This document shows positions 5,145-33,784 of a stretch of 64,000 bases of DNA, in pieces (the stretch's first letter is position 1; every line of letters starts with the position of its first letter). The DNA comes from Anolis carolinensis (Eukaryota). The stretch is from positions 9,175,256 through 9,239,255 of the forward strand of contig NC_085842.1 of NCBI RefSeq assembly GCF_035594765.1. The letters are read 5' to 3'. The notes under the pieces are model-generated. The model was not told where the DNA came from. It did not search any database and saw nothing but the letters and a program-made list of their open reading frames with translations. Position numbers and translations under genes: made by a program.

Positions 5145-6791
5145 ATGGAAAATTCATTGTCAAAATCACACACAGGGGAGAAGCGACATAATTGTAAGGA
5201 CTGTGGGAAATGTTTCATTGAGAGAAGTTCTCTTGCTAAACATCAACGAACTCACACAGGAGAGAAGCCATATAAATGCATGGAATGTGGAAAGAGCTTC
5301 AGTGAGAGTGGAAATCTACGCGCCCATCAAAGGACTCACACAGGGGAGAAGCCACATACATGCATGGAATGTGGAAAGAGCTTCAGTGAGAGTGGAAATC
5401 TACGCGCCCATCAAAGGACTCACACAGGGGAGAAGCCATATAAATGCATGGAATGTGGAAAGAGCTTCAGTCGGAGTGGAGATCTACGCACCCATCAAAG
5501 GACTCACACAGGGGAGAAGCCACATACATGCATGGAATGTGGAAAGAGATTCAGTCAGAGTGGACATCTGCATATCCATCAAAGGACTCACACAGGGGAG
5601 AAGCCACATACATGCATGGAATGTGGAAAGAGCTTCAGTAAGAGTGGACATCTGCGTATCCATCAAAGGACTCACACAGGGGAGAAGCCACATACATGCA
5701 TGGAATGTGGAAAGAGCTTCAGTCAGAGTGGACATCTGCGTATCCATCAAAGGATGCACACAGGAGAGAAGCCACATACATGCATGGAATGTGGAAAGAG
5801 CTTCAGTCATAGTGGAAGTCTACGCACCCATCAAAGGATTCACACAGGGGAGAAGCCACATACATGCAGGGAATGTGGAAAGAGCTTCAGTAAGAGTGGA
5901 CATCTGCGCACCCATCAAAGGACTCACACAGGGGAGAAGCCACATACATGCATGGAATGTGGAAAGAGATTCAGTGAGAGTGGACATCTGCGCACCCATC
6001 AAAGGACTCACACAGGGGAGAAGCCACATACATGCATGGAATGTGGAAAGAGATTCAGTGAGAGTGGACATCTGCGCACCCATCAAAGGACTCACACAGG
6101 GGAGAAGCCACATACATGCAGGGAATGTGGAAAGAGCTTCAGTAAGAGTGGAAATCTACACACCCATCAAAGGACCCACACAAGGGAGAAGCCACATACA
6201 TGCATGGAATGTGGAAAGAGCTTCAGTCAGAGTGGAAATCTACACACCCATCAAAGGACTCACACAGGAGAGAAGCCACATACATGCATGGAATGTGGAA
6301 AGAGCTTCAGTCGGAGTGACTATCTACGTTCCCATCAAAGGACTCACACAGGAGAGAAGCCACATACATGCATGGAATGTGGAAAGAGCTTCAGTGGGAG
6401 TGGAGATCTGCGTATCCATCAAAGGATTCACACAGGGGAGAAGCCACATACATGCATGGAATGTGGAAAGAGCTTCAGTAAGAGTGGACATCTGCGTATC
6501 CATCAAAGGACTCACACAGGAGAGAAGCCACATACATGCATGGAATGTGGAAAGAGATTCAGTGAGAGTGGACATCTGCGTATCCATCAAAGGACTCACA
6601 CAGGAGAGAAGCCACATACATGCATGGAATGTGGAAAGAGCTTCAGTCAGAGTGGACATCTGCGTATCCATCAAAGGATCCACACAGGGGAGAAGCCACA
6701 TAAATGCATGGAATGTGGAAACAGCTTCAGTAAGAGTGGACATCTGCGTACCCATCAAAGGATGCACACAGGAGAGAAGCCACATAAATAG
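5145..6791 (+). CDS. Gene A1: C2H2 zinc-finger-only protein, 548 aa, 19 tandem fingers
   Basis: Uninterrupted ORF of 28-aa C2H2 repeats with TGEKP linkers and all Cys/His intact. ATG in good Kozak context (aaaATGg). Upstream acceptor ttttcctcttattcatctcgcag at 4863 is followed by in-frame stops, so no effector exon can be fused. Confidence 0.85.
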
Positions 6792-6892
6792 GACAAGTGC
6801 AAAGAAGCCAGAATGTTTGTCCAAAGAACTTCTAATGACTATGACTTAAAATAGACATGAACAGGAAGTGGAAGGGGAAGAAATCACAAAAT

Positions 6893-7340
6893 CATATAAC
6901 CATAGAGTTGGAAGAGACCTCATGGGTCATCTAGTCCAACCCCCTGCCAAGAAGCAGGAAATTCCATTCAAAGCACCCCGGACAGATGGCCATCCAGCCT
7001 CTGCTTAAAAGCCTCCAAAGAAGGTTCCACAGCTGAACTGCTCTCACAGTGAGGAAGTTCTTCCTTATGTTCAGGTGGAATCAGAATAATGGCTTCAAAA
7101 TACAGGAAAGGAGATTCCAACTGAACATCAGGAAGAACTTCCTCACTGTGAGAGCTGTTCGGCAGTGGAACTCTCTCCCCCGGACTGTGGTGGAGGCTCC
7201 TTCTTTGGAGGCTTTGAGGCAGAGGCTGGATGACCATCTGTCGGGGGTGCTTTGAATGCGATTTCCTGCTTCTTGGCAGGGGGTTGGACTGGATGGCCCA
7301 TGAGGTCTCTTCCAACTCTGGGATTCAATGATTCTATGAT
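6893..7340. mobile_element. Two CR1 3' ends in inverted orientation (6893-7081 minus; ~7083-7340 plus)
   Basis: Both arms match the CR1 3' terminus and are mutually complementary. Confidence 0.85.
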
Positions 7341-7499
7341 TTAAAGTGAGTAAATCGAGATAAAAATCAGCATGCAGCAAGAGTTTTGTAGATTGGTTTT
7401 TCTATTAGTTTTGTTCTTTTTATGTAGGTTATGTGTCCTTGAAGCTTTAATGTTTCTTATGTAGTCCTTTCCTTAAAAATGCCAAAATTGTAATTTATA

Positions 7500-9830
7500 T
7501 TAAGAATTATCAGAACAACCTATTAAGAGGACAGAAATAAAGCCAGGAAAGCTCCAGGTCTGGACGGATTGGGAACAGAATATTACAAAAGTATTAGAGA
7601 AATACTGACTGCAACAATATTAGAATTGTATATTGGAATAATGATTGTGGAGAAAATACCAGAATCGTGGAGGAAGTCATTCATAATATTAATATGAAAA
7701 GATTTAACAGACCCAGGGTCTTACAGGCCCACATCATTAGTTAATCAGGATGAAAGGTTTTTATCAGTTATAATAGCCAATAGAATGAATAAATGCATGT
7801 ACAAGTATATATAAAAAGATCAATCTGGGTTTGTAAAAGGAAGACAAATGTTACTAGCATTAGATATATTTAATGCTTTGATTGTGTAGCATGGCAGATA
7901 ATAAGTGAGATTATGAATTAATTTGGAATGGGACGTAGAATAAAAGGATGATTAAAACAATTTTATTTGCTATGGTGATAGAATTATGTGCAAACGCCAT
8001 CCAAAAAGGTAAGAATGTAGAAGGTGTAGGAATAAAGGAAAAGCAGAAGGTGAGCTTATTTGCTGATGACACATTGTTATTGATTAAATATCTGGGTAGG
8101 TCAAATTGATAGGAGAGAGGATCATTAAAAGATATTTGGGAAAACAACGGGTTTATATTATACAAAGAAAAAAGAAAAAGACTTTATAGAACAGAGCCAT
8201 ACGGGAATTAGAATCAAGAACAAATTAATATACCTGGGAGTAAGTATAACAAAGGACTTAAAAGAAATAGAAGAGGTAAATGTAGTAGCATTGAGGAAAA
8301 TAGTTCAAAAAAAATTAATACACATCTATCTTGGTTTGGAAAGACAGCAATACTAAAAATGAAAATGCTTCTGAGGATAAACTTTATACTTACATATACC
8401 TTATATTTATAATGCCATTTCAGATTACAGAAGAAGAGTTGAATACATTATTTCTTTGCAACATTTCTACCCCACCTTTCTCCACCCCAAAGGAGACTCA
8501 TTTGGACAAATGATAAATACTGTAATGGCAGTCAAAGAAATTGACGAAACAAGTTACAGAACAGATCTCAAAAAGAAGAAGGATTAGCGCTTCCTCATAT
8601 GAAAAAATATTATAAAGCAAACAGACTGAGATCGGTTATACAAGGAATGATGAAAAGGAGGATGTAGAATAGTTAATAATGGATTCAGGAAAAGTGGAAG
8701 AAGAAATTCGGAATATGTTTTAAAATAGTTTATGAGAAAAAAAATAAGGTAAACTGGGAACCCAATGTTGAGTAATGCATTAGAAATATGGAACAAATAC
8801 AGGAGAAAGTTAATAACAGATGGCTCAATAATAACCCCAATTATAATGGAAAAGACATTTCCAAAAAATAAAAAATATATATGATGGATAAAAAAATTAA
8901 GGGGAAAAACTTAGATAAAATAGGGGATTGGCTAAAGGTTGGAATGAAGAAAGAAAAGATCAGGAACATAAAAATTTGAAAGGAATATCCAGTAAAATTT
9001 CTAAAATATTAATTGAAAAAAACAAAGGAAAAGTAAAGAATAACACCTTCAAGAAGATTTGGAAAGAAGATATAGGAATGAAAATCAATGAAACAGAGGG
9101 GTTACAATTATGGGCACAAAGACACTTGAAAAATATATCCATATGTGTTAAAGAAAATTATTATTTAGTTGATATGGAAATGGTACCTCACATCCATAAG
9201 AATAGGAAATATAAATAAAAACTACTCAAACAATTGCTGGAGAGGATGCCAAGAATCGGGAACATACATACATATGTGGTGGCTGTGTCAATATGTAAAT
9301 AATTTCTGGGGAAAGGTATTAAGAGAGATAGAAGACACAATGAACATTCAAATAGAAAGCAGTCTTAGCATGGCTTTATTCTCATTATATAATAATAAAC
9401 AGTTGGAAAAAGAGGACAAAGATGCGATAACAAACGCATTAACAATTGCAAGACAGCTTATAGCAAGGAATTGGAAAAGGGAAATAAATATAGAGATAGA
9501 AGAATGGTATAAGGAAGTATGGAAACTGGGAAGAAATGATAGGTTGACGTGGAGAGGGATTTAGAAACAAAGTGGTTGTGATGATGTCTGGAGAAAATGT
9601 ATTGGAAGAGGATTCGAAAAGAAAGACAGAATTACCTCCTCAAGAGGGAATGAAAAGGAATTTTGGACAGATGATAAATAAAAAAAGTGACTTGGGGGAG
9701 GGTAAGAAATCTGTATAAGCGTGAAAATAACAGTAGATGCCAAATGTTAATGTATTGTAGATTGTACTGAATATTATGTGGCTGCTGTAAAAGGATGTAC
9801 GATTTTCTTTAAAAAAATTAATAAATGTAT
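7500..9830 (+). mobile_element. Degenerate L1-clade LINE ORF2 remnant (paralog 34411-36520)
   Basis: A-rich strand; residual motifs KAPGLDG, LFADD, GGLALP and C-terminal CWRGCQESGTYIHMWW; many stops and frameshifts. Confidence 0.75.
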
Positions 9831-11599
9831 TTGTAATTTGTATAAATATGCATTTGTTTTTCTTTCTTGTCTTTGAATATAAATTATTTTTAAAAACAGA
9901 TTATGATGTAGCAGCTATAAAAGCCAATGTGATTCTAGGCTGCCCCGATAGGAGGATTCTGTCTATATCCAAGGAAGTCACGGCCTCCTTTCTTCCGCTT
10001 TGTTCAGACTCACCTGGAATGACCCTGTCTCCAGGTCTCAGTCCCACAATTCAAGACGGATATTGACAGGTCAGAATATCTCCAGAGACGGGATGTAGAG
10101 AAGGGCGGAGAGAGACAGCTGGGTATGTTTCACTTGGAGGAAAGAAGGAAGGGCTTCTCCCTCGGCAGGAAGGAAATGTTGGATCCCAAAAGGGTTGGCC
10201 GTGGTCAGGATGAGAGGTGGACGGAGAGGAAAGGCGTGTCCATGAGACCCCGTGTTGCCTCCTCCTGGAATGGACTCCTAGGACCCTAGAGCCGGAAGAG
10301 ACCCCCAAGGGCCACCCCGTCCTGCCCCTGCCATGCAGGAAGGCACAATCAAAGCACTCCCGATAGATAGCCTCTGCAGAGAAGCCTCCAGAGAAGGACA
10401 CTCCACCACACTCTGAGGCAGCCTAGGCCACTCTCCAACAGCCCTTACTCATTCTTAATGTGTATCTTTGTATATTAAGAGAAGACCTGTAAATAGTTAT
10501 AAGTAGTGAATAAATCAAGAATAAAACCTCCAAGGACTTTGGATGAAAGTCAGAACTCAAGAGTGTTTATTCAAAGAGACGAACTACTTTACAAGGCCAG
10601 AGGCTGTGAAACTGTGACCAGGACTCTGCAGTGTTTTGGGGGTTGGAATCCACTCCTTGCCTATGAGACAGTTTGTCCCATTGTATAGCTGGAGGAGGCC
10701 GTGAGAGGACTGAATTCACCTGCCTGTCTAGCAGGGGTCTTGTGTGTGTGTTTTCCTCTGCTTCTCCTTTCCTTCCATCACTCATTAACACTGACTAGTT
10801 GTGCAGGCCTCACCTACACAACAGAAAGCATTTCCTGAAGGTCAGAGCTGTTCAGTAGTGGAGTCTGCTCCTATCGGGAGTCCATAAGAGTCTCCTTTGG
10901 AGGTTTGTAAGCAGAGACGGCATGCCCATCTGTTGGGGGTGCTTTGGTGGTTTATTCCTGCGTGGTCTGAAGATGATTAGCCCCTCAGCACACAACCCAA
11001 ACTGACTGGGAGGAAGAGATGTGTGTTCTTTCGCCATGAAACCACTGATCCCGTGGGTCGTGGAGTCCAGCCCCATTCTCTCCAAGCAGCGTCACCAGCC
11101 AGACCATCCTCCGCAGGTCGCTCTCCAGCCCCTTTTTGGGGTCACCCAGAGAGAGGACTCCCTCCCCCCCCCACTTCTCTAGGCCCTTGCCTTCTTACCC
11201 AAATCAGAGATTCACAGAATAGTATATTTGGAAGAGACCACGAGGGCCATCTAGTCCAACCCCCTTCTGCCAGGCAGGAAAAGCAGAATCCCTTGCCAGA
11301 ATCCCCGCAGGGTTCAATACTGTCTCCCACGCTGTGTAACATCTACATGAAGCCGTTGGGAGAGATCATCTGAAGTTTTGGAGTTCAATGTCATCTGTAC
11401 GCAGAGGTCTTCCTTGTCAGTCGCAAGGCCAAACAGGGCACAGGGTCACAGCCTGTGTTGGATGGGTTACCTGTCCAAACGTCTCTCCCCTTATGAACCA
11501 TCTCGGAGTCTAAGACCGTCTGGAGAGGCCCTGCTCTCAATCCCGCCCTCTTCGCTGGCATGATTGGCAGGGATGAGAGACAGGGCCTTCCTTCTCGGT

Positions 11600-12600
11600 A
11601 GTGGAAAGGATGGGAAGAGAAGAGAAAAAGGAAGGAAGGGCAAGAGAAAAGAAGGCAAAGGAAGGGAAGGAAGGAAGGGGAAGAGAAAATAAGGCAAAGA
11701 GAAATATGGGAAGAGAAGAGAAAAAGGAAGGAAGGGCAAGAGAAAAGAAGACAAAGGAAGGGAAGGAAGGAAGGGGAAGAGAAAATAAGGCAAAGGAAAA
11801 TATGGGAAGAGAAGAGAAAAAGGAAGGGAGGACAAGAGAAAAGAAGACAAAGGAAGGGAAGGGAAGGAAGGAAGGGGAAGAGAAAATAAGGCAAAGGAAA
11901 ATATGGGAAGAGAAGAGAAAAAGGAAGGAAGGGCAAGAGAAAAGAAGGGAAGGGAAGGTAAAGCAAGGAAAGAAGGAAGGAAGGGCAAGGGAAAAGAGGG
12001 CAAAGGGATGGAAGGGAAGAGAAAAAGGGAAGTAAAGAATGGCAAGAGAAAATAATAATAATGATGATGATGATGATGAATCTTTATTTATATCCTGCTT
12101 TTCTCCCTCACTGGACCCAAAGAGGCTTACGACATATTAAACTCACATAAACAACAATCAGAGTACATCAATAATATAATATAATAGGATAAACAGATTA
12201 ATAAAAACAATTATAGTTTGCATTCAAGTTCATAAGGCATCAAATGAGACATATATTGTACTCTACTCCAGTCCATAACATATGATAGGCAAAGGAAGGG
12301 AAGGCAAGCGAAGAGCAAGAAAAAGCAAGGAAAGAAGGCAAAGGAAGGGAAGAGGAGAGAAGAGAAAAAGGAAGGAAGGGCAAGAGAAAAGAAGGAAAAG
12401 GAAGGGAAGTGAAGGGAAGAAAAAAAGGAAAGAAGGGCAAGAGAAAAGGCAAAGGGGAGAAAAGGGAGGGAAGAGAAAAAGGAAGGAATGAAGGGCAAGA
12501 GAAAAGGCAAAGGAAGGGACAAGAAGACAAGGATAGAAGGAAAGAAGGAAGAAAGGGGAAGGAAGGGCTAGAAAAAAGAAAGCAAAGGAAGGGAAGGTTA
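11600..12600 (+). repeat. Polypurine tandem repeat (~98-103 bp unit, ~3-4 copies plus degenerate units; interrupted at ~12050-12285)
   Basis: Unit aaaataaggcaaaggaaaatatgggaagagaagagaaaaaggaaggaagg... Confidence 0.9.
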
Positions 12601-12916
12601 GAAGCCAGAACGTATTTTAGTTCTTGCGAACCACTGGTAGTCCGTGGACCACTGGTTGAGAGCCACTGTCTGAAAGGGAAGGGGCTAACTCTGGATCCCT
12701 CCCATAACGGCCATTTACAATATTCAAGCTGACCAGTCCTGACTAAAGAGGAAAACAGAGGATGTGTCTGTAGGGGCACAACGTTCACAAACTGGACATT
12801 TAAACCAAGGTGGAAATGGAGCTGGAAACTAAGACCAGAGGAACAAGTGATGGAATCACATATGGTTTATTTCTTTTCAGACGAGGTGACAAGACAATCA
12901 TATTTAACTCTCTGAA

Positions 12917-13252
12917 TGTCAGGATGCAAAAAGATCAGCATTCTCCAAGCTGTTCTTTTCACACCTGACTACAACAAATCGGATAAAGAAGACCATTTGG
13001 CTGGGAAGGCTGATTTATGACAGGGTCTGGTCTTCAGACGTGGGAAAGGACAAAAGGAAAGGGAGGTGTGAATGGAGAAGAAGAGACGTGAAGGGAGGAG
13101 GGAAGCAACCACCCAATATACTGAGGGGAAAGAGCGGAAGACGGGCAGTAGAAGCTTTGCGGCCATTTTGGCAAGGCGGATTCAATAAAGTTTTCCATGG
13201 CTACAAGCTGTGTGAGCCTATCTTTGTCTCCTACACCTTCCAGGAACTGACA
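12917..13252 (+). mobile_element. Solo LTR (Gypsy-like), unit 1 only
   Basis: TGTCAG...CTGACA termini, 5-bp TSD CTGAA, internal AATAAA; the site is empty in unit 2 at ~39705. Confidence 0.85.
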
Positions 13253-13258
13253 CTGAAG

Positions 13259-13393
13259 CAGTGGTCCTCAACCTGTGGGTCCCCGGGTGTTTTGGCCTAC
13301 AACTCCCAGAAATCCCAGCCAGTTTACCAGCTGTTAGGATTTAGGGGAGTTGAAGGCCAAAACATCTGTGGACCCACAGGTTGAGAACCACTG
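13259..13393. mobile_element. hAT MITE (135 bp)
   Basis: TIRs CAGTGGTCCTCAACCTGTGGGTCC / GGACCCACAGGTTGAGAACCACTG; 8-bp TSD CTCTGAAG with the left copy split by the solo LTR. Confidence 0.9.
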
Positions 13394-13546
13394 CTCTGAA
13401 GGATTGTCACACAGAGCTTGCTTTCTGCTGCTCCAGAGAACAGACCTCCAACTTACAGGTTCAAATGACAAGAACGGGACTCCACCAAATCTGACGCAGA
13501 ACTTCTCAAAGTTTGAAATCAGACATTTACCCACAATGGCTGTTTT

Positions 13547-14677
<1,131 letters not shown>

Positions 14678-15904
14678 TCATTCCTCAGTGTGCGTCATAA
14701 AGACTCAAAGGAAGTGGGATAAGGAGTGGATTGAAATGATCCTTAAGACAACATAAACATGGAGGAAAAGAAGATATGCCTGTTGTCCTTTCCCCTCCCC
14801 TTGTTCAGTGAAGATGGACCCTGGTTGTCTGCCTGGAGCCTCTAAGAGAGAGATGAGTAACATACGCTCCAGAGGCTCCCTGTTGCTCAGCCCAGCCCGG
14901 TTGTTTATTCCGTCTCCTTCTCTCTGGGGAATGGATGCCTTTTCCCTTCACATCCAAATGCTTGCCTTTTTCTCTAGCTTTAGACTTTACCCATTTCACC
15001 ATCCTTCTCTCCTTTTTATTTCTCTCCCCCAATCCCAGTTCTCTTTTCCCATGCTCCCTGAAGGTTGGATTTTTCCGCTCCAACGTACAAGATCCCATAC
15101 CTAATTTCAGAGAACAGCAGAGTCTCGCTTATCCAACATAAACTGACCAGGAGAACACTGGATAAGTGAAAATGTTGGATAATGAGGGATTAAGGAAAAG
15201 CCTATTAAAGGTCAAATTGCATTATGATTTTACAAATTAAGCACCAAAACATCATGTTTTACAACAAATCAACAGAAAAAGCAGTTCAATACACGGTAAC
15301 ATGATGGAGAAATCACTGTATTTACGAATTTAGCACCAAAACATCGCAATGTATTGAAAGCATTGACTACAAACAATATTTATTACTAAAAACTTGACTA
15401 TAAATATAGAATTGCATAAAACAACACTGTTGGAAGTTAAATCCATAAAAAGTTCAGTCTTGTGAAGATTTTTTAAAATCTGTGACCCTTGCCTGCTTTT
15501 CCAACTATTGCCATTTCTCCGCTGACAAGTCTCGCCATCTTTGCGGCATCTTTATGTCCATCCCCGTAGCTTCTTCTTGTTGCTTGATGTGTGTCATTGC
15601 GGTTTCTAGAGCCCAAACCCTATCCTTGTGTGAGATCCTGAGAGGCCTAACAACTTATTCCATTTCTTCTATCCTTGCCGAGAATAGCTTCCTGCAATAG
15701 TTCCTTTTGAGCTCTTCCAAAACGCCCTGATCCATCGGTTGGCATATGACGGTTACATTCGGTGGCAGAAACATCGCCTTCATGTCCCCCTCTTGAAGCT
15801 CCTCTGCATCAGGGTGTGTTGGGGCATTGTCTAGCAACAAAACCGCTTTCCTGGGCAGGTAAATTTCCTTCAAAAATTCCTCCGTGGAAGGAACAAGTTC
15901 CTTA

Positions 15905-16367
15905 GGGCTGGGCTGTAGCAGTAATAAGATCTACCAACCGAAAGGTGGCCAGTTCGAAGCCCGGTCGGGGGTGAGCGCTCGACCTCAAGCCCAGCTCACT
16001 GTTTACCTGAGCAGTTCGAAAAGAGTTTATAAGCTGTAAATAGAGAAATGAGGCAACGCAAATTGCGGGGGAGGTATTTTAAAACACCATAAAGAACAAG
16101 ACCAGAAATGCGGTGACCAAGAGGAAGGTGGAAGGAGGAAGTTCTGATGGCTCTTCGTCATAGAGAATGAAGCAACAGCACCCCCATGACTGAATCTGAG
16201 CAGAACATCAGCCTCCAAGGCACCCAAAAACTGGACTTCCAGACCACATACCTCCTTCTGTTTGTCTTATTCTGTTCTGTCCAAACGGTATTGAATGTTT
16301 GCCGTGTATGTGTATTGTGATCCGCCCTGAGTCTCCTTGGGGAGATAGAGCGGAATATAAATAACGG

Positions 16368-16419
<52 letters not shown>

Positions 16420-16428
16420 TAATAATAA
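15905..16428 (+). mobile_element. Sauria-type SINE
   Basis: tRNA-like head gggctgggctgtagc..., B-box-like AGTTCGAAGCCC, 3' tgatccgccctgagtc and a (TAA)n tail. Confidence 0.8.
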
Positions 16429-16452
16429 TTAGTCTTTGAACATTTCACTGGT

Positions 16453-16542
16453 GGGGGACATGGAAAGAGCCTCCTCGAAGACTGAGTAAATCCAGTCGGG
16501 CGTCCCCTGGGCAACATTTCTTGTAAACGGCTGATCTTTCCA
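16453..16542 (+). ncRNA. HDV-like self-cleaving ribozyme at the Vingi 5' end
   Basis: P1 GGGGGAC/GTCCCCT, P2 TGGAAAGA/TCTTTCCA, P3 GCC/GGC, L3 TCCTCG, P1.1 CC/GG, GCAA-P4-GC with candidate catalytic C16531. G1 coincides exactly with the TSD boundary. Confidence 0.8.

Positions 16543-22492: not shown

Positions 22493-22495
<3 letters not shown>

Positions 22496-22560
<65 letters not shown>
22496..22560 (+). repeat. (GA)n microsatellite (shorter and interrupted in the paralog at ~55999-56035)
   Basis: Direct inspection. Confidence 0.95.
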
Positions 22561-22564
<4 letters not shown>

Positions 22565-22765
22565 ACTGACTTTGACTTGACTCCAGTTATGGAAATCTTC
22601 CCACTTGAGTCTGAATTGGTGCTTATTATTATTATTATTATTATTATTACTCTTATGTCATATATTTCTAACACAAGCCCTGCCTTGCGGACCCTCAGTG
22701 ACTGTGACGATTTAGGCTAATACTGCCTTTTGAAACAGAAATCCCCATCAGTGAGGGAGCCTTAC

Positions 22766-22846
22766 CAAGAGAGTCCACAATCCCATTCATCTCCTCCATG
22801 ACCTGCTTGTGCAAGGCTTTCTGGTCCGGATTCAGGAGAACCCACT
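22766..22846 (-). pseudogene. Gene B1 KRAB-A exon remnant; acceptor and 5' part deleted
   Basis: [26 protein letters not shown] with donor |gtaagg retained. The 539 bp present in unit 2 (56320-56858) are missing at junction 22846/22847. Confidence 0.85.
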
Positions 22847-22956
22847 GCCTAAGTGTACTATTCTACATATATTCTTGTTGACATTAAGTGGGTTAGTTTT
22901 GGCCCAGCTCTCCACCATGTTCAGGCCATTTTGAATTCTGATCCTATCTTCTAGAC

Positions 22957-23197
22957 CAGGGGTCCCCAAACTTTTAAAACAGGGGGCCAGTTCACGATCC
23001 TTCAGACCGATGGAGGGCTGGACTATAGTTGGCCACCAAGCAATAATAATTAATAATAATTAATAACAACAACAACAACAACAACAACAAAGAGGGTTTG
23101 AAGAGACCCTTTGGGCCAATTAGTCCAACCCCCTTCTGCCTCTGTGCACCAAAAGCACAAGCAAAGCACCCCTGACAGATGGCCACCCAGCCTCAAT

Positions 23198-23250
<53 letters not shown>

Positions 23251-23381
23251 GGGTTGTAAGAGAAGAAGAGACCCCCTTCTGTCATTTAGCCCAACCCACT
23301 TCTGCTCTTGTGCCGTGGGGGCCGGATAAATAGCTTCGATGGGCCGCATCTGGCCCCCAGGCCTTAGTTTGGGGACCCCTG
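22957..23381. mobile_element. hAT MITE, unit 1 only
   Basis: TIRs CAGGGGTCCCCAAACT / AGTTTGGGGACCCCTG; 8-bp TSD TTCTAGAC; empty site at 56961. Confidence 0.9.
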
Positions 23382-23712
23382 TTCTAGACTGTGAGCTATC
23401 CCTGCTAATTTGGTTTCATCTGAAAACATGATACGCATATTAAGCAGCACCCTCTTCCCATGTCTTGTACCCTTTTGAATCTTAGTTCCATTCAAAGTTC
23501 TTTGAACATCCATTCTGATTTATTTAGTTTTCTCTTCATTTCCCCCCCCCCCCCACCCCTTATAGCAAATGTTTGCAATTGTGCCTTCAGTATTTCACTT
23601 CTAAGGAAAGGCATTCTATCTTGTCTGTTTCAACAGATGTTGATAATTAAGCCTGGAGCAAAAGGCACCCCGGCAGGCCCAGTCCTCCTCTCCCAGGAAC
23701 CCTTCTGCTTAC

Positions 23713-23783
23713 CTGACTCAGTCCCACTCCATCGCAAAGGGGGAGAAACGGCTGAGGATTCGGCAACAGCATCATTCCAGACC
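23713..23783 (-). CDS. Gene B1 71-bp linker exon
   Basis: ctctctctccag|...cag|gtaagc; phase 1 to 0; conserved with 57611-57681. Confidence 0.7.
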
Positions 23784-24523
23784 CTGGAGAGAGAGCAAGG
23801 GGTGGAAAGCTGGTCACAGAAACAGGCCTCAGAGGTGACCATTGCAGTCCTATAAAGAAACCGGTGAGGAAACGACCCTAAGAACACAGGCACATTCAAC
23901 AGCCAATGAAGATGTACAATGTGAGGGTTTAGGACTTTATCTCGCAAGCAGGGCTGTGTTTGAGTGAAACTAGCACTGGGCTTTGTGTTTCAATTGACAA
24001 AAGTGATTCTTTGCTGTCTGTTTGTCTTCCAGCTCAGTTTCAGGGCTCAGCTCAGCTTAGGGTCCCACCTGGGAAGACACTGAAGGGCTGCATTGTCAGT
24101 CCTATTGCAAGAAAGAAAACTGCAAATCAAACTGAAATGACACCTCTAGCAACCCTATGCCTACATATAACAATTTATTTTATTTTTATTATTATTATTA
24201 TTATTTTATTTTTTTACTCGCCTCTTCTTGCAGTTCCAGGCAGGTTACCACAAAATTTTAAAAACACAACCTTTGTCAAAATTCAACAAAGATACATATT
24301 TCTATAAAAGATCCACATTAAAACTGCCTTTCTATAAAATACATATTAAAGTACATAAAACATCACAGAAAAGACATGAGTTTAAGATATATACCCATCT
24401 CAAGGCCAAATGATCCGGCATGTTCACCTTCTGAAGCTCCAACTGTGGGTGTGCACTCATCCCCCCAAAGCGGGATTTCCACTGGCACAAAACCCCAAAA
24501 CTCCCAGAAGAGTCCCTTCTCAC

Positions 24524-24641
24524 CCTGCAAGGCGGCAGCCCCGTCTCCTTCCCGCTTCAGCTCCTTCTGCCTGAGACTCTGGGTGGTGTCTGGTGGAGAT
24601 TCCTCTGGTGCAGGGACTTCCATGGAGTTATTATTATGGGC
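24524..24641 (-). CDS. Gene B1 post-SCAN linker exon (118 bp)
   Basis: ctcttccag|AHNNNSMEVPAPEESPP...ALQG|gtgaga; phase 0 to 1; differs from the paralog by an in-frame 3-bp indel. Confidence 0.75.
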
Positions 24642-24977
24642 CTGGAAGAGCACAGAGCATTCCAGAAGGAGTTTGGGAAATGTTCAGAAACATCACAGAC
24701 CTATAGACCTTTTTTGGAAAGAATAACTCTGAGATGGCAACCTAGTTTGGAACCAATGCCCCCCTCCCCCTCCCACCATTGTCTATGTTCTATCTTGAGC
24801 AGAGCATCAACCAAGCTGAGGGTAGAGATGGAGGGGCAGAGCAGGTGGGGAAAGAGGCCAAGGGAGCAGGGCCTTGCTTATCCACCACATCGGTCCCATC
24901 TTGGAAGAAAGGCAGGATGTACGTTCAACCTGTCCATCAGTCCCCAGGTTAGTGAAACCCAGAGGGAATGCTCTCAC

Positions 24978-25361
24978 CTGTCCTTCCTGCTCCTTGTCCT
25001 CGGCCCGACTCAGGAGGAAGCCTTCCGCCAGGGCCACCGCCTGGGAACAGGTCTCTGCCCCACACTCTCGGACCCAGCTCCCCATTTCTGGGGGCAGGAT
25101 GCTCAGGAACTGCTCCAGGGTCACCAGGTCCAGCACCTCGGCCTTGGTGTGCTGCTCTGGCTTCAGCCACTGGCGGCACAGATCGTGGAGACGACTGCAA
25201 ACCCCTCTGGGTCCTTCACCCTCTTGGTAGGAGGACTGCCTGAAGCGCTGGCGCTGTGTGTCCGAGCTGTCAAGGTCCACACTCAGGGGCTCATGTCTTT
25301 CCCAGGATTCCCCACTGCCCCCAGGTCCTGCTTCAGGTCCATGTGAGTTGGGTCTCTCCAT
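24978..25361 (-). CDS. Gene B1 SCAN-domain exon
   Basis: [53 protein letters not shown] is a SCAN domain; donor CAG|gtgaga; upstream acceptor at 25489. Confidence 0.9.
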
Positions 25362-26510
25362 GTTGGAACCACCCTGGTGAAGAACCCAACCGTATCCAAG
25401 ATGCTTTTCCTCCTCTTCTTTCTTTCAAGGGAAAGAAATCCCTCCACAGGCTCTACTCCGAAATTCTCAGCCAAAAATCACATTTCCTCTGTGAAAGAAA
25501 GGCAGAAAGGTTGTGGGACCAGGCTTTTGAGCAATAGTAGCAGCAGAAATGGCAACTATATGATCCAAGGTATAATGACAGACCCGGTTTGTACTTGAAA
25601 TGCACCTTGAATTTTTATTTAAATGTACATTTATGAAGGTCTGAATGTAACTTAATTTAAATGGAATTTTGAAATGTGACTGTAATTATTTGATATATGT
25701 TTTTTATGCTGTAAGCCACCCTGAGTCCCCTTGATGGGTGAGAAGGGCGGGGTAGAAATGTTGTAATATTGTAATTTTGTTCGTTTGTAATAAATAAACA
25801 TAAAGAAGACTCAACAATGACATGGTTTCATTATATAACTGACTCCAACAGAGACTCCGTCTAGACAACAAAATGGGTAGACAAGAATCGGAGAATCATC
25901 GGAACCAACTGCTACAGACAAAAAAACAAGCCAACTGGGAAGCTGCATCAATTTCTTCTGAAAGATTTTACAATTGATGGAGAAATAAAAGAACCTATGA
26001 GTCAGTGGGTGAAAAGTCTAGGCTGGGCAATAAGTCCATGAGAATGGGAAGAACTCTGGTAAAAATGACTAAAATTTACAAGGAGTCACACAATTAAATA
26101 AAATTTCTACAAAATGATACATAGATGGTACATAACTCCAGAAAAACTCTCAAACACACACACACGCACAGAGATATATGATATGTTGGGACTTGTCCAA
26201 AAGCTAACGAATTCTGAATAAAAATCCACAGAGACATGGAAACTATTCTAGAGTACAAAATCCCATTAAGACCAGAACTTTTTCTACTGGGAAACATCAA
26301 GAAAGACTCTTTCTTTATATGACAACAGAAGCAAGAACTGAATACGCAAAACTATGGAAACAACAAGACATGCCAACACCAGAAAACTGGACGACAAAAG
26401 GTTTCGAAATGGCCAAAAAGGACAAACTAACTTCAGCTGCACAACAAACAAATACACAGAAACTTCCAAGAAGAATGGAAGCCCTTCATTGAATTCACAA
26501 AGAAGCAAAG

Positions 26511-26980
26511 GGGCCGGGCTGTGGCGCAGCTGGGTAGTAACCAGCTGCTATAAATCACTACTGACCGAGAGGCCATGAGTCCGAAGCCCGGGTCGGGTTA
26601 AGCCTCCGACCATAAAAAAAAAAAATAGCCCTGGCTTGCTGTTGACCTAGCAGCCCCGAAAGACAGTTGCATCTGTCAAGTAGGGAAAATTTAGGGACGC
26701 TTTATGCGGGAGGCTAATTTAACTAATCTACAACACCATAAAACTGCTCACGAGGAAAAGAAGAGGAAGAACAGCCACCAATGGACGGTGAAGCAACAGC
26801 TCCCCCTGTGGCCGGAAATCGTGAAGCTGGAAAGATGTTAAAAAATGCCTCTGTGTCTGTCTAAAACTGAATGTTGTTTGTCTGTTGGCATTGAATGTTT
26901 GCCATATATGTGTTCATTGTAATCCGCCCTGAGTCCCCTTCGGGGTGAGAAAGAAGGGCGGAATATAAATACTGTAAATA
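26511..26980 (+). mobile_element. Sauria-type SINE, unit 1 only
   Basis: gggccgggctgtggcgcagctgg head and taatccgccctgagtcccc...gtaaata tail; empty site caaaggaagatg at ~60355. Confidence 0.8.
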
Positions 26981-27299
26981 AAGGAAGATGACCACGGCAG
27001 GATCTGTTGAGTAAAATATTATTAATAGTATACAGTTACATTTTGTACTATTTTTGAACTCTTTATTCAAGAGACTTTGAATAACTGACCTATCAACACT
27101 CTTTGATTAGAATATAGAAGGTGGCAAGCCTCGTTAATTAGATATTTTAGAGCGACACATATATAGAAACACATATTTGTGTAGTGTTTAAAGAAGAAAA
27201 GATGAAAATCTAACATAGTGAATTATCATCCAGACAATCCTAATTGACTAACCAATGGAGCGGATATTTGGGATCCATCTGGCAGTCGTGATGATGAGA

Positions 27300-28330
27300 T
27301 GAAATGCCTGCAAAGAACGGGAAGAGGAGGCGGGAAGGAGGCCGGATCTCCTGGGAAGGCCAGAAGGTCCTGAGGAGAAGAGGGCGTTCGCTTCTGTCTC
27401 CGAGGCCCTGTGGATCTCCCCAACCCCGAGGCCATGTCTCTCATCCCGGGGCCTGGGCTGAAGAGAGGGACGTGAAGCCAAAACCAAGGCCAGGCCTCTC
27501 TCCCCCCCCCCCGCCCCCCCGGGGAGATTCTGCCCGGAGACGGATGACGTCAGGGAGGGAGGCGGATTCCCATTGGCGGACCCTGGGCGTTGGGAAGAAA
27601 AGAAAGGAGGAGCGTCTCTCTCTGTCTAGAGCTCCGTTCGACGGCCGAGAAGCCCCGCCCCTCTCTGGGCATCGTGCCCGCGGCTGCCATGTTGAGCCCG
27701 GGCGGAAGTCCACCGAGGAGGGAGGCGTCTTCCTAGAGAGACTCAGGACGAGAGGCGCCTTTTCCTGTCAGAGCGAGCGCGGGAGGGAGAGGAAGGAGGA
27801 AGCGGAGGAGGAGGAGGAGGAGGAGGGGTGAGTGTGCGTGTGTGTGTTGGGGGGGGGGGGGCTGAGTGGGTCCCCGAGTCTCCCCCCGCGCCCCCCTCCG
27901 GCCTTGGCCTGCCTGGCCCTTCGCCTCAAGGCCTCCCTTCCGGCCTCCCTTCCTGGCCCGGCCTTCCTGCCTCCCCCCCCCGCCCATCTCCATCTCCACG
28001 CAGAGGCGCCTCCCGCTCCTTGGCCTGGCCCCCCCTTCCCCGCTTCACCCGGCGCTTCCTCGGGCAGCCTGCCTGCGATGAGGAGCGGGCCAGGAGAGTC
28101 CGGCCCAGGGCGAGTCTGCCCGGAGACGGGTGACGCGGAGAGACGAGGCCGATTCCCATTGGCCGATTCCTGGAGTGACCGTTAACGGCAGAAGGGTGCA
28201 GCGGGGGGCGGGGCGGGGGCGTTCCTGCCCGGAGACCGATGACGCCAGAGAGGAAGGCGGATTCTCATTGGGCGTTGGGAGGAAAGGAAACAAGGGGCGT
28301 GTCTGCCCATTTTCCGCCGGGAATTAAAAA
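27300..28330. promoter_or_regulatory. CpG island, probable bidirectional promoter for B1 (-) and A2 (+)
   Basis: Very GC- and CpG-rich. Contains GC boxes, YY1-like GCTGCCATGTT (~27683), ETS CGGAAGT (~27703), three CRE+CCAAT modules and a + strand donor GG|GTGAGT at 27828. Confidence 0.75.
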
Positions 28331-28660: not shown

Positions 28661-28864
28661 TATAACAGATTTCATATGCAATAGGGTAACAGTGTAAATC
28701 AATGTTTCTCAACCAGGGGGTCGGGACCCCTGGGTAGGTCACGAAGGGGATGTCAGAGGTGTTGTCAAAGACCATCAGAAATACATATTTCTGATGGTCT
28801 TAGGAACCCCTTTGGCAGTCCTTGTGAATGTGATCAACAAATTCTCTGGTTAATTGGGGACCAT

Positions 28865-30548
28865 TTTATTTATTTATTTATTTATTTTATTAGACTTGTA
28901 TACCGCTACTCCCAGTTTGGCTCGGAGCGGTTTACAGAAATAGATTAAAACAATACACTTAGCTTTAAATAAACAATAACAACAATAAAAACAACAATAA
29001 AAACAGACATAGCCCCGAGTTTTTCACCCATCGAAAGCTTGTTGGAAGAGCAAGGTTTTGCAGGCTTTCCGAAAGGCAAGTAGGTCTCGGATAGTTCGAG
29101 TTTCAACTGGCAAGGCATTCCATAAATGAGGGGCTACAATCAAGAAGGCATTCTTCCTAGTAGAAGACAAATGATAAGTCCGTATGTTAGGGATTTCAAG
29201 CAAATTTTGGTCTTCGGACCGAAGTAATCTCTGGGGTTGGTAGGGGGATAAGCGGGCCCTCAGGTACGCCGGCCCTAAACCATGTAAGGCCTTAAAGGTT
29301 AGTACCAGTATCTTGAAAGTAATCCGGTACTCAATCGGTAGCCAGTGCAGCTGTTGTGGAATTGGGGTGATACGCCACCTCACCGGCACCCTGGCGAGAA
29401 GACGAGCTGCCGCATTTTGCACCAGCTTCAGTTTCCGGATCACTGACATAGGAAGGCCAATGTAGAGGGCGTTACAGTAGCCGAGCCTCAAGATGACCGT
29501 CGCCTGGATCACCGTAGCCAGGTCGTTCCTAGATAGGTAGGGAGCCAGTCGCCTAGCCTGACGTAGATGGAAAAACGCAGATCTGCTCACAGCAGAGACC
29601 TGGGCCTCCATTGTGAGCAGAGGGTCCAATAAGACACCAAGACTTTTTACAGAAGATGACGGACGTAGTGTCTCGCCATCCAGGGTAGGCAGCTGCATCT
29701 CCCCCCCACCCGGACGGCCCAGCCAAAGGATCTCCGTCTTCGCTGGATTCACCCTCAACCTGCTGGCACGCAATCATCCAGTAACGGCCTCAAGGCACTG
29801 ATGGAAACTATCGGGTACGGAGTCCGGCTGGCCCTCCATCCTCAGAATGAGCTGAGTGTCATCAGCGTACTGGTGGCACTCGAGCCCAAAGCTCCACACC
29901 AGTCGGGCAAGCGGTCGCAAATAGATGTTAAATAATAGAGGAGAGAGAATAGCTCCCTGTGGGACCCCACAAGTTAGTGGAGACCACGCGGAAACCATCC
30001 CTCCCCTCACCACCCGCTGTCCCTGATTCTGGAGGAAGGAGGACACCCATTTAAGGGGTATCTCCCTAACCCCCATCATGGCTAGGCGATGGGTCAATAG
30101 ATTGTGATTGACCGTATCAAATGCTGCTGTGAGATCCAATAACACGAGCAGCGCTGATCCGCCTTGATCCCTTTGGCAGCGAAGCTGATCTGTGATGGCA
30201 ACTAGCACAGTCTCCGTCCCGTGCCCCCTACGGAAGCCGGACTGGAAGGGATCAAGTCCGGCTGTGCGATTGAGGAACTGCTGCAACTGTTCTGCTGCTG
30301 CCCTCTCAACCACCTTGCCCAGAAACGGAAGATTCGAGACTGGGCGGTAGCTAGAGGAAACCGAACGATCTAAGTCTGGTTTCTTCAGCAGCGGAGAGAC
30401 CATCGCCTCTTTTAAACCCTCTGGAAAAACTCCTCAAGGGAGCTATTTATTATATTCAACAGAGGTTCACGTAATCCCTCCAGGCAAGATTTTACTAGCC
30501 AGGAGGGACACGGATCGAGGGAGCAGGTGGTCGGCCTAGTTGCAGTCA
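28865..30548 (-). mobile_element. L2 LINE, 5'-truncated (duplicate of 2188-3868)
   Basis: RT ORFs 29774-30403 (YADD) and 29024-29773. Confidence 0.9.
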
Positions 30549-31801
30549 TCTGGTGGCACAAGCTATACCTGGTACTACCCAGATGACAGTCAGAAGCATC
30601 ATCTTTAGCACATAATTTTAGTTCGAGCCACAACATTGTCTCCTGTGCAAAAGCAAACTTTTGCCTTTATTTTTCCTTCATTTACAATGTAATGTCTTCC
30701 TGTCCTTGTTGCCTTTCTATGAATCCGCTGCAGTTTGCCAATGTCCTTTCTAAAATGGACTGAACTGAGCAGAACTGGGCAGGAATCATGATGTCTCCCA
30801 CCCAAGGGTGCTGTTGGAGTGCAGAAGGATCTGGAGGGCAGCAGGATTCCCACTCACCCTGGGGGTCTATCCATCTGTCTCCTCTATACCGCCTTCTCTC
30901 ATGTACTGCTGCTAGGCTGAGTGCCTTGGCTCTGGCTGAAGTTACATACCTTTGTGGTATAGGTTTTGTAAGAATGCAGTATGTCAAGGAACTTTGTGGC
31001 CTAATGTGCTCTCAGTGTCTCCAGGCGCCTTGCTTTAGAAACGTGGGGCAGGGATCACGCTGCAGGGAAAGAGAGGATCAGGAAAATATCTTTTTCCCGA
31101 GTTGGGAGAAATCTACACAAGAAAATGAAGTATTTTTCTCCCAAGACTGATCACTTGGGATAGTCTGTCCATACAGATGGCCACTCAGATTTTGAGTGGA
31201 GATGTGAAGAAGCGGGATCTAGGTAGGAAATGCTTTGCATCGTTAGCCCCTTTCCGTGTTGACCATATTATTAGAGGCCTTCCTTTACCAAGGTTGGATT
31301 AGACACAGGATCTTAGGCCGCTATCCCCTTTGCAGGGATTGTTCTTTGTTGGGCAAGTGTTAAAGTGCTTCTCAGCAGGCAACGGGCTCTTACCAGTTGG
31401 GCCAGTCTTTCTCCCCTCTTCCCCTGTGATTGCTACAGCACTAGGCTATTGTTCTTCATGTTCAATGAGATCTTTCTGTACTCTGCTCCTGATAAGATTT
31501 TCCTCTTATTCATCTCGCAGGTAACCTCTAAACGAACCTTATGAAGAAAACATTGCCCTTTGCCTTACGTCTGAAAGGAAAGTACGCAGGATTAACAAGA
31601 ACAAGAAATAAATTGGAGAAATTATATTTCAAGCTACATACCTTTGAATGTAAGGAAAGGAAGGATTGTGCTGTAAAAAGAGGGGTTGGTAAAGAGAAAA
31701 TAAGGCTACAGCAATACAGAGACTGGGAAGAGGAAATGTCCTATTCAGGAGTCCATATCTGTGAACTTCAGGCATAATATTAGAATAATAAATGTTAAAA
31801 A

Positions 31802-33784
31802 ATGGAAACTTCATTGTCAAAATCACACACAGGGGAGAAGCGACATAATTGTAAGGACTGTGGGAAATGTTTCATTAGGAGAAGTTCTCTTGCTAAACAT
31901 CAACTAACTCACACAGGAGAGAAGCCATATAAATGTGTGGAATGTGGAAAGAGCTTCAGTCAGAGTGGAAATCTACACACCCATCAAAGGACTCACACAG
32001 GGGAGAAGCCACATACATGCATGGAATGTGGAAAGAGCTTCAGTCAGAGTGGAGATCTACGCACCCATCAAAGGACTCACACAGGGGAGAAGCCACATAC
32101 ATGCATGGAATGTGGAAAGAGCTTCAGTCAGAGTGGACATCTGCGTATCCATCAAAGGATGCACACAGGAGAGAAGCCACATAAATGCATGGAATGTGGA
32201 AAGAGCTTCTGTCAGAGTGGAGATCTGCGTATCCATCAAAGGATACACACAGGAGAGAAGCCACATACATGCATGGAATGTGGAAAGAGCTTCAGTCAGA
32301 GTGGAGATCTACGCACCCATCAAAGGATCCACACAGGGGAGAAGCCACATAAATGCATGGAATGTGGAAAGAGATTCAGTAAGAGTGGAAATCTACGCAC
32401 CCATCAAAGGATCCACACAGGGGAGAAGCCACATACATGCAGGGAATGTGGAAAGAGATTCAGTGAGAGTGGACATCTGTGTATCCATCAAAGGATGCAC
32501 ACAGGAGAGAGGCCACATACATGCATGGAATGTGGAAAGAGATTCAGTCAGAGTGGAGATCTACGCACCCATCAAAGGATCCACACAGGGGAGAAGCCAC
32601 ATACATGCATGGAATGTGGAAAGAGCTTCAGTAAGAGTGGACATCTGCGTATCCATCAAAGGATACACACAGGAGAGAAGCCACATAAATGCATGGAATG
32701 TGGAAAGAGCTTCAGTGAGAGTGGAGATCTACGCACCCATCAAAGGATCCACACAGGGGAGAAGCCACATACATGCATGGAATGTGGAAAGAGCTTCAGT
32801 AAGAGTGGACATCTGCGTATCCATCAAAGGATACACACAGGAGAGAAGCCACATACATGCATGGAATGTGGAAAGAGCTTCAGTCAGAGTGGAGATCTAC
32901 GCACCCATCAAAGGATCCACACAGGGGAGAAGCCACATACATGCATGGAATGTGGAAAGAGCTTCAGTAAGAGTGGACATCTGCGTATCCATCAAAGGAT
33001 ACACACAGGAGAGAAGCCACATACATGCATGGAATGTGGAAAGAGCTTCAGTCAGAGTGGAGATCTACGCACCCATCAAAGGATCCACACAGGGGAGAAG
33101 CCACATAAATGCATGGAATGTGGAAAGAGCTTCAGTCAGAGTGGAAATCTACGCACCCATCAAAGGACTCACACAGGAGAGAAGCCACATACATGCATGG
33201 AATGTGGAAAGAGCTTCAGTCAGAGTGGAGATCTACGCACCCATCAAAGGATACACACAGGAGAGAAGCCACATACATGCATGGAATGTGGAAAGAGCTT
33301 CAGTCAGAGTGGAAATCTACGCACCCATCAAAGGACTCACACAGGGGAGAAGCCACATAAATGCATGGAATGTGGAAAGAGCTTCAGTCAGAGTGGAGAT
33401 CTACGCACCCATCAAAGGATTCACACAGGAGAGAAGCCACATAAATGCATGGAATGTGGAAACAGCTTCAGTGAGAGTGGACATCTGCGTATCCATCAAA
33501 GGACTCACACAGGGGAGAAGCCACATACATGCATGGAATGTGGAAAGAGCTTCAGTCAGAGTGGAAATCTACACACCCATCAAAGGACTCACACAGGGGA
33601 GAAGCCACATAAATGCATGGAATGTGGAAAGAGCTTCAGTCAGAGTGGAAGTCTACGCACCCATCAAAGGATGCACACAGGAGAGAAGCCACATACATGC
33701 ATGGAATGTGGAAAGAACTTCAGTAACAGTTCGAATCTTCGTACCCATCAAAAGATTCACACAGGAGAGAAGCCACATAAATAG
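31802..33784 (+). CDS. Gene A2: C2H2 zinc-finger-only protein, 660 aa, 23 tandem fingers
   Basis: Uninterrupted C2H2 array with all zinc ligands intact and a Kozak ATG. Acceptor at 31520 is followed by stops in all three frames. Confidence 0.85.

What the first reader, a model, noticed from the sequence alone, without database searches (positions are those of the whole stretch)
5145..33784. PRDM9-style minisatellite zinc-finger arrays: variation concentrated at contact positions -1, 3, 6
Seen: 84-bp units are almost identical in the framework ([24 protein letters not shown]). A1 contact triplets: ENA, ENA, RDT, QHI, KHI, QHI, HST, KHT, EHT, EHT, KNT, QNT, RYS, GDI, KHI, EHI, QHI, KHT. A2: QNT, QDT, QHI, QDI, QDT, KNT, EHI, QDT, KHI, EDT, KHI, QDT, KHI, QDT, QNT, QDT, QNT, QDT, EHI, QNT, QST, NNT. 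The arrays (19 vs 23 fingers) cannot be aligned finger-for-finger although the flanks align base-for-base. Established: concerted evolution with diversity at contact residues is the hallmark of PRDM9. Inference: a specificity-shuffling system without the SET domain.
Basis: partly seen in the sequence, partly recalled or inferred. Interest (0 to 1): 0.72.

Follow-up and report, generated by a model that had tools for sequence, protein, structure and literature searches.

The report
Young lizard zinc-finger arrays, fast-evolving contacts
Two recently duplicated lizard genes each encode about 20 near-identical zinc fingers that differ mainly at the DNA-reading residues; the pattern is real and PRDM9-like, but it is the known way young zinc-finger gene clusters evolve and the neighbouring SCAN-KRAB genes show it too.

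Summary
Positions -1/3/6 hold 47% of amino-acid entropy (11% expected). Their dN (0.39) exceeds synonymous divergence (0.15), while framework dN/dS is 0.25.

The flanks differ by 2.1%, yet only fingers 1-3 remain colinear. In those three fingers, 10 of 11 differences are non-synonymous and 7 lie in contact codons.

By the Baker et al. 2017 statistic, A1 and A2 score 0.41-0.52, the range of squamate PRDM9. The two SCAN-KRAB arrays on the opposite strand (B1, B2) score 0.40-0.55, so this is not a special SET-less system.

It is a young, tandemly duplicated zinc-finger cluster. It is evolving by unit duplication, loss and conversion, with diversifying selection on DNA-contact residues, as described for vertebrate poly-ZNF genes.

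The A genes appear to lack any effector domain: in-frame stops precede the ATG and no KRAB, SCAN or SET lies on the + strand. This scan noted the same pattern on other DNA of this genome.

The parts
5145..6791 (+). A1 open reading frame, 548 aa, 19 C2H2 fingers. It starts at an ATG in an AAAATGG context, preceded by in-frame stops at 5118 and 5139.
5241..6786 (+). A1 84-bp tandem repeat (18.4 units, 93% match)
31802..33784 (+). A2 open reading frame, 660 aa, 23 C2H2 fingers. It has the same start context and the same upstream stops as A1.
31909..33779 (+). A2 84-bp tandem repeat (22.3 units, 91% match). Fingers 10=12=14 and 6=13=15 are identical, indicating 168-bp two-finger duplications.
13547..14671 (-). 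B1 zinc-finger exon. It contains a different finger family (consensus [11 protein letters not shown]...) with the same contact-site diversity pattern.
40007..41134 (-). B2 zinc-finger exon, paralogue of B1
24807..25361 (-). SCAN-domain exon of B1
   Evidence: PF02023, E 1.6e-35
58868..59542 (-). SCAN-domain exon of B2
   Evidence: PF02023, E 3.3e-35
56171..56392 (-). KRAB exon of B2
   Evidence: PF01352, E 3.3e-16
22764..22856 (-). Partial KRAB remnant of B1
27500..28300 (.). CpG island between the 5' end of B1 (-) and A2 (+). It is a candidate bidirectional promoter. No equivalent lies upstream of A1 inside the window.
1983..27518 (.). Segmental duplication unit 1 (A1 + B1). It is paralogous to 28661-60889 (A2 + B2, enlarged by CR1 and Gypsy insertions).
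28661..60889 (.). Segmental duplication unit 2

Best explanation
A1 and A2 are two young paralogues of a squamate-specific poly-zinc-finger gene. Their flanks differ by 2.1%. Each copy was duplicated together with a head-to-head SCAN-KRAB-ZNF gene (B1, B2) as a unit of about 27 kb.

Shown: the arrays are coding minisatellites. Whole 84-bp fingers, and 168-bp finger pairs, are duplicated, deleted and overwritten by unequal recombination, slippage or conversion. The framework therefore stays nearly uniform and finger-for-finger order is lost within about 2% of neutral divergence. Non-synonymous changes at helix positions -1, 3 and 6 accumulate faster than synonymous ones, and the rest of the finger is under purifying selection.

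Inferred: the proteins are sequence-specific DNA binders whose specificity is being driven to change, most probably through conflict with transposable elements or other fast-evolving repeats, as in other vertebrate poly-ZNF families. Also inferred: the A proteins are translated from the ATG at 5145 / 31802 as finger-only proteins without an effector domain. They would therefore act as blockers or competitors, or through an unknown partner.
For: Array anatomy and triplets.

Diversity at contact sites:
- 47% of entropy lies at -1/3/6; contact dN is 0.39, dS is 0.15, framework dN/dS is 0.25.
- Minimum-change counts are 13 N / 0 S in contact codons against 20 N / 9 S elsewhere (Fisher p = 0.04). 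Contact N density against synonymous density gives p = 0.008.
- In the only positionally homologous fingers (F1-F3), 10 of 11 differences are non-synonymous and 7 lie in contact codons, while flanks differ by 2.1%.

Turnover: the finger distance matrix, identical fingers and the 168-bp higher-order repeat are.

Constraint: both ORFs are intact and all 168 zinc ligands are present. The flank rate of 2.0 frameshifting indels per kb (13 of 18 indels in 6.35 kb) predicts about 3.4 frameshifts between the copies if they were neutral.

Generality: B1/B2 give the same P statistic and the same contact excess.

No effector on the + strand.

Literature: PMC2604467 reports positive selection at -1/3/6 in young poly-ZF paralogues of many vertebrates. 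PMC10547256 reports the same across metazoan ZNF families. PMC3971581 counts 723 ZNF-only and 240 SCAN-KRAB models in Anolis carolinensis.
Against:
- Neither ORF is present as an exact protein in the 15-billion-protein collection, and no near-identical annotated protein was found.
- A1 has no CpG island upstream within the window.
- 37 of 40 fingers carry His instead of the canonical aromatic residue before the first Cys.
- Much of the contact diversity comes from only a few single-nucleotide alleles and two old helix haplotypes that were amplified. Pairwise dN/dS among repeats therefore overstates the number of independent adaptive events.
- TE targeting is inferred, not tested.
Confidence: 0.78

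Rival explanations
1. This is a dedicated PRDM9-like specifier. The A arrays would be hypervariable within populations and would serve a PRDM9-type role (fast-changing genome-wide targeting in the germline) in a lizard in which no PRDM9 was found, working through a partner rather than their own SET domain.
For: The P statistic and inter-finger identity are in the PRDM9 range. Among 226 vertebrate poly-ZNF proteins only Podarcis PRDM9 ranks clearly higher. Baker et al. could not detect PRDM9 in Anolis carolinensis.
Against: - The same signature occurs in the neighbouring SCAN-KRAB arrays B1/B2 and, per notes of this scan, in other windows of this genome, so it does not single out one gene.
- No SET, SSXRD or KRAB lies on the + strand.
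- The finger framework is not closer to PRDM9 than to other lizard ZNFs.
- There are two diverged copies rather than one locus.
- In snakes a few non-PRDM9 genes already outrank PRDM9 on this statistic (ranks 3 and 5).
Confidence: 0.05
2. These are non-functional relics. The A arrays would be 5'-truncated orphan finger exons, not expressed as protein. The contact-site pattern would be inherited from a once-functional ancestor and merely amplified by neutral unit duplication.
For: - The ORF begins inside a degenerate finger remnant directly after stop codons.
- No annotated protein exists.
- There is no promoter-like island upstream of A1.
- Most diversity traces to a few alleles and two old haplotypes.
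- The canonical aromatic residue is replaced by His.
Against: - Both ORFs (3.6 kb in total) are free of stops and frameshifts, although flanks show 2.0 frameshifting indels per kb and 2.1% substitutions since the duplication. That predicts about 3.4 frameshifts and about 1.5 stops, a joint chance near 0.01 (the expectation is my inference).
- All zinc ligands are intact, and framework dN/dS is 0.14-0.25.
- Post-duplication changes in F1-F3 are 10 non-synonymous to 1 synonymous, concentrated in contact codons.
Confidence: 0.13
3. This is an assembly artefact: the arrays or the 27-kb duplication come from mis-assembly of a repetitive ZNF cluster.
For: Three perfectly identical 168-bp blocks in A2. 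The region is repeat-rich with an N run at 62352-62480.
Against: The two units differ by 2.1% plus private TE insertions (CR1 and Gypsy only in unit 2). Each array has its own ordered set of variant fingers and an intact frame. No gaps lie inside or next to the arrays.
Confidence: 0.03

Closest known systems
Lineage-specific poly-ZNF expansions under positive selection at -1/3/6 (Emerson & Thomas 2009, PMC2604467; Wells et al. 2023, PMC10547256)
   Same: Tandemly duplicated clustered genes, TGEKP-linked C2H2 arrays, an excess of non-synonymous change confined to -1/3/6, and finger gain and loss between young paralogues.
   Different: Inter-finger identity here (82-83% aa, about 92% nt) is far higher than in typical annotated poly-ZNFs. 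The median is 63% in 226 proteins and 52-62% in 11 Anolis proteins. The arrays therefore behave as minisatellites. The A genes show no N-terminal effector domain.
PRDM9 zinc-finger minisatellite (Oliver 2009; Baker et al. 2017, PMC5519329)
   Same: An 84-bp coding minisatellite with concerted evolution of the framework. Diversity is concentrated at the contact residues: P is 0.41-0.52, against 0.46-0.57 in squamate PRDM9 and 0.65 in Podarcis PRDM9.
   Different: There is no KRAB, SSXRD or PR/SET. There are two paralogous copies next to SCAN-KRAB genes that show the same pattern. The finger framework is not PRDM9-like. Allelic hypervariability and meiotic expression are unknown.
Anolis ZNF-only and SCAN-KRAB-ZNF gene models (Liu et al. 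2014, PMC3971581)
   Same: A matches the ZNF-only class (723 models). B matches the SCAN-KRAB class (240 models), which expanded independently in reptiles.
   Different: These particular genes were not found as annotated proteins. The head-to-head A/B pair duplicated as one unit is a local detail that, as far as I found, has not been described.

Membership tests
Tandem C2H2 (Krueppel-type) poly-zinc-finger proteins | Tandem 28-residue C-x2-C-x12-H-x3-H fingers joined by TGEKP linkers | tested here: met
   19 and 23 fingers, all ligands intact. Pfam zf-C2H2 E 3.9e-110 and 9.1e-137; zf-H2C2_2 with 18 and 22 stretches.
KRAB-ZNF | KRAB A box encoded upstream on the same strand | tested here: not met
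   For A1/A2: no KRAB motif or tblastn hit on the + strand anywhere in the window. KRAB is found only on the - strand (56171-56392, partial at 22764-22856), and it belongs to B.
SCAN-ZNF | SCAN domain exon upstream on the same strand | tested here: not met
   For A1/A2: SCAN is found only on the - strand (24807-25361, 58868-59542). It is met for B1/B2.
PRDM9 | PR/SET methyltransferase domain (with KRAB and SSXRD in complete orthologues) | tested here: not met
   tblastn of three PRDM9-type proteins (P0012, P0063, P0073), among 120 queries, gave no hit outside the finger arrays except the - strand KRAB.
PRDM9 | [quoted passage not shown] | tested here: inconclusive
   P is 0.41-0.52, in the PRDM9 range, and ranks 4-23 of 227 in an ad hoc vertebrate sample. 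A genome-wide ranking in this species was not possible, and B1/B2 score the same.
PRDM9 | Allelic hypervariability of the array and meiotic expression | not testable with these tools
ZNF-only poly-ZNF genes (sensu Liu et al. 2014) | Finger array with no associated KRAB, SCAN or BTB exon | tested here: met
   In-frame stops at 5118 and 5139 precede the ATG. There is no effector exon on the + strand in the 3.5-5 kb upstream or elsewhere in the window. The transcript structure itself was not testable.

The most novel reading that the evidence does not exclude
In a lizard lineage where PRDM9 was not detected, effector-less minisatellite finger genes such as A1/A2 are highly polymorphic between individuals. 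They act as fast-switching germline DNA-binding specifiers, for example marking or shielding repeats or influencing where chromatin is opened. This would be a functional analogue of the PRDM9 array, uncoupled from its methyltransferase.
Probability: 0.05. Interest if true: 0.75.

Novelty: new member of a known kind. Interest (0 to 1): 0.27.

Why it matters
The locus is a clean, quantifiable example of how zinc-finger specificity is remodelled. About 2% of neutral divergence was enough to scramble finger order and to replace contact residues at roughly 15 times the neutral rate, while the framework stayed fixed. It also shows that the Baker et al. 'PRDM9-like' statistic is reached by ordinary young SCAN-KRAB and finger-only genes in a squamate. 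That matters for anyone using the statistic to infer PRDM9-type function. It does not reveal a new mechanism.

Tried and rejected
- Effector exons for A. I looked for them by ORF listing, KRAB/SCAN motif scan and tblastn with 120 ZNF proteins, including PRDM9s. There are none on the + strand.
- N-terminus of the closest-framework protein. I searched the N-terminus of Zootoca P0018 against the window and got only noise.
- Annotated product. The exact look-up was negative. The whole-protein and N-terminal word searches were saturated by generic ZNFs with no near-identical hit. They also did not verify the species. The best SCAN match is 75% to an Anolis sagrei protein. 'Anole' therefore rests on earlier notes of this scan.
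- PRDM9 origin of the A fingers, tested by framework identity. The result was not discriminating: PRDM9 scored 18.0 of 24 against 20.0 for a Zootoca ZNF.
The later protein search used residues 1-56 of A1 (window 5145-5312), a different place that is nevertheless about 95% identical to the start of A2.
- Target prediction. I did not attempt recognition-code motif prediction or TE scanning, because no TE library or validated code is available here.
Full report
**What is there**

The window is vertebrate DNA rich in LINE, CR1 and Gypsy elements. Earlier notes of this scan call it an anole lizard. I could not verify that directly: the best SCAN match is 75% to an Anolis sagrei protein.

A self-comparison shows a segmental duplication. 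Unit 1 (1983-27518) is paralogous to unit 2 (28661-60889), which is enlarged by CR1 and Gypsy insertions. Each unit carries two genes.
- An A array lies on the + strand. The A1 ORF is 5145-6791 (548 aa) and the A2 ORF is 31802-33784 (660 aa).
- A B array lies on the - strand (B1 13547-14671, B2 40007-41134).

Tandem Repeats Finder reports 84-bp periods for all four arrays. A1 has 18.4 copies at 93% match and A2 has 22.3 copies at 91%.

**Check of the observation**

Translation gives 19 and 23 C2H2 fingers, each array starting with one divergent finger.

Over the 40 repeat fingers:
- Positions -1, 3 and 6 hold 47% of the amino-acid entropy, against 11% expected.
- Nei-Gojobori pN is 0.305 at these codons and 0.041 elsewhere.
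- Contact dN (0.39) exceeds the overall dS (0.15).
- The framework has dN/dS of 0.25, or 0.14 without the four other variable positions 2, 9, 17 and 22.

Pairwise values among repeats are not independent, so I also counted minimum changes per codon column. This gave 13 non-synonymous and 0 synonymous changes in the three contact codons, against 20 and 9 in the other 25. That is 1.76 changes per non-synonymous site, against 0.33 in the framework and 0.57 per synonymous site.

Two details need correction. The flanks are 97.9% identical with 2.8 small indels per kb, not base-for-base identical. The framework has four further variable positions.

**Colinearity and turnover**

A finger-by-finger distance matrix shows that only fingers 1-3 are positional homologues. 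After that no register is preferred. The mean distance between fingers is the same within arrays (6.7-6.8 of 84 nt) as between them (7.1).

A2 contains three identical copies of a two-finger (168-bp) block: fingers 10=12=14 and 6=13=15. A1 has an identical adjacent pair (fingers 10=11). A1 finger 7 is identical to A2 finger 4.

The variable nucleotides reduce to 17 non-singleton columns. Helix codons 15-18 form two linked haplotypes:
- His3 with CTG, CGT and Ile6;
- Asn/Asp3 with CTA, CGC and Thr6.

A few recombinants exist (EHT, KHT, GDI, QDI). Q/K/E at -1 and the other sites occur on both backgrounds.

The apparent richness of triplets therefore comes from a handful of single-nucleotide alleles on two old finger lineages. 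These were reshuffled and amplified by unit-level recombination. This is ordinary minisatellite behaviour and needs no special machinery.

**Selection since the duplication**

The flanks give a local neutral yardstick: 135 substitutions in 6354 aligned bases (2.1%) and 18 small indels, 13 of them not multiples of three.

In fingers 1-3, where homology is positional, the copies differ at 11 nucleotides (4.4%). Ten of these are non-synonymous. Seven fall in the nine contact codons: E/R, E/Q and E/Q at -1, N/D at 3, and A/T twice at 6. That is roughly 15 times the flank rate at contact sites. Some of these changes may be one conversion event, because A1 fingers 2 and 3 are both ENA, but at least four events are independent.

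Neutral drift would also be expected to break the frames. The flank rates predict about 3.4 frameshifts and about 1.5 stop codons between the two arrays. Both ORFs are intact and all 168 zinc ligands are present (the expectation is my inference). This argues that both copies have been under purifying selection for most of their history.

**Is it PRDM9-like?**

Baker et al. 2017 (PMC5519329) measure 'PRDM9-style' evolution as P, the share of amino-acid heterozygosity at the DNA-binding positions. Complete PRDM9 orthologues score 0.33-1.0. The squamate orthologues score 0.46-0.57, with ranks 1-5 of about 200 genes. Slowly evolving arrays score about 0.17-0.2.

The values here are:
- A1: 0.48 (0.52 without finger 1).
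- A2: 0.41 (0.45 without finger 1).
- Podarcis PRDM9 (P0012), as a positive control: 0.65.

In 226 vertebrate poly-ZNF proteins retrieved here, the median P is 0.28 and the 95th percentile is 0.46. The 11 Anolis proteins in that set score 0.25-0.29, with only 52-62% inter-finger identity against 82-83% here. The A arrays are therefore real outliers by this measure.

The SCAN-KRAB arrays B1 and B2 are outliers too. They score P of 0.40-0.55, have 79-83% inter-finger identity, and show 13 non-synonymous and 0 synonymous minimum changes in their contact codons. First-stage notes report the same pattern in at least two other windows of this genome, and a follow-up on other DNA judged it ordinary. 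Those notes are leads, not evidence.

The signature therefore belongs to this young cluster, and probably to many such clusters in the genome. It is not specific to a particular SET-less gene.

**Gene structure**

B1 and B2 have SCAN exons (24807-25361 and 58868-59542) and a KRAB exon (56171-56392 in B2, with only a remnant at 22764-22856 in B1), all on the - strand.

For A, no KRAB, SCAN, BTB or SET is detectable on the + strand. The finger frame is closed by stops at 5118 and 5139, directly before an ATG in a good context. The first residues are the remnant of a degenerate finger linker. A2 is identical in all these respects. If expressed, A is most simply a finger-only protein.

A CpG island at 27500-28300 lies between B1 and A2 and could be a bidirectional promoter. 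A1 has no such island within the window.

Finger-only genes are the largest class of ZNF models in Anolis carolinensis (723), and SCAN-KRAB genes number 240 (PMC3971581).

One search used the first 56 residues of A1, which is a different place.

The exact ORFs are not in the protein collection, and no near-identical annotated protein was found.

**Comparison with what is known**

Positive selection confined to -1, 3 and 6 among recently duplicated poly-ZF genes was shown for human, mouse, cow, chicken, frog and fishes (PMC2604467). It was extended to other metazoan ZNF families and linked to transposable-element control (PMC10547256).

What is less usual here is the very high similarity between fingers, which makes these arrays true coding minisatellites, as in PRDM9. 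Baker et al.'s own tables show that a few non-PRDM9 genes outrank PRDM9 in snakes.

The A genes fail the defining PRDM9 features (SET, SSXRD, KRAB). Their finger framework is no closer to PRDM9 than to other lizard ZNFs.

**Verdict**

The inference of a distinct specificity-shuffling system is not supported.

This is a new member of a known kind: young, tandemly duplicated squamate zinc-finger genes. They evolve by finger-unit turnover plus diversifying selection on DNA-contact residues, probably in conflict with repeats.

The one reading that would be exciting is allelic hypervariability with a germline specifier role in a lizard where PRDM9 was not detected. It remains possible but is made unlikely by the generality of the pattern. 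It needs population long-read and expression data.

Noticed in passing
window 5229-6780 and 31886-33773: 37 of 40 repeat fingers have His instead of the canonical Tyr/Phe two residues before the first Cys (HTC/HKC). Only A1 fingers 2 and 4 and A2 finger 2 keep YKC. A non-canonical framework variant has been spread through both arrays by concerted evolution.
   Followed up: partly
window 5229-6780 and 31886-33773 (codon 22 of each finger): The non-contact position between the two zinc-binding His (T/I/M) is as variable as contact position 6. It carries several synonymous Ile codons. Podarcis PRDM9 (P0012) varies M/T/I at the same position.
   Followed up: partly
window 11603-12550 and 38106-39400: A purine-rich minisatellite with a 96-101-bp unit (GGAAGG / AGAGAA-type) lies between the A and B genes in both duplication units. 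It has about 4 copies in unit 1 and about 12 in unit 2.
   Followed up: no
window 22764-22856 (-) versus 56171-56392 (-): B1 keeps only part of the KRAB exon that is complete in B2. This agrees with an earlier first-stage note on a KRAB deletion in B1.
   Followed up: partly
window 5104-6849 (+), 31935-33827 (+), 6324-6824 (-): The 84-bp unit is also open in a second + frame, and partly on the - strand. This produces long spurious ORFs overlapping the real finger frame.
   Followed up: no
window 42337-46535 (-), 48208-52971 (+), 17359-19218 (+): Apparently intact retroelement ORFs are present. These are a CR1-type LINE (ORF1 with an esterase-like domain, plus EN-RT ORF2), a 1587-aa Gypsy gag-pol, and another LINE RT. 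The first two are private to duplication unit 2, so they inserted after the duplication.
   Followed up: no
window 1983-4236 versus 7852-10880 (and their unit-2 partners): Divergence between the two units is uneven: 2.7% upstream of the A arrays against 1.4-1.8% downstream. This could reflect conversion between units or different mutation rates.
   Followed up: no
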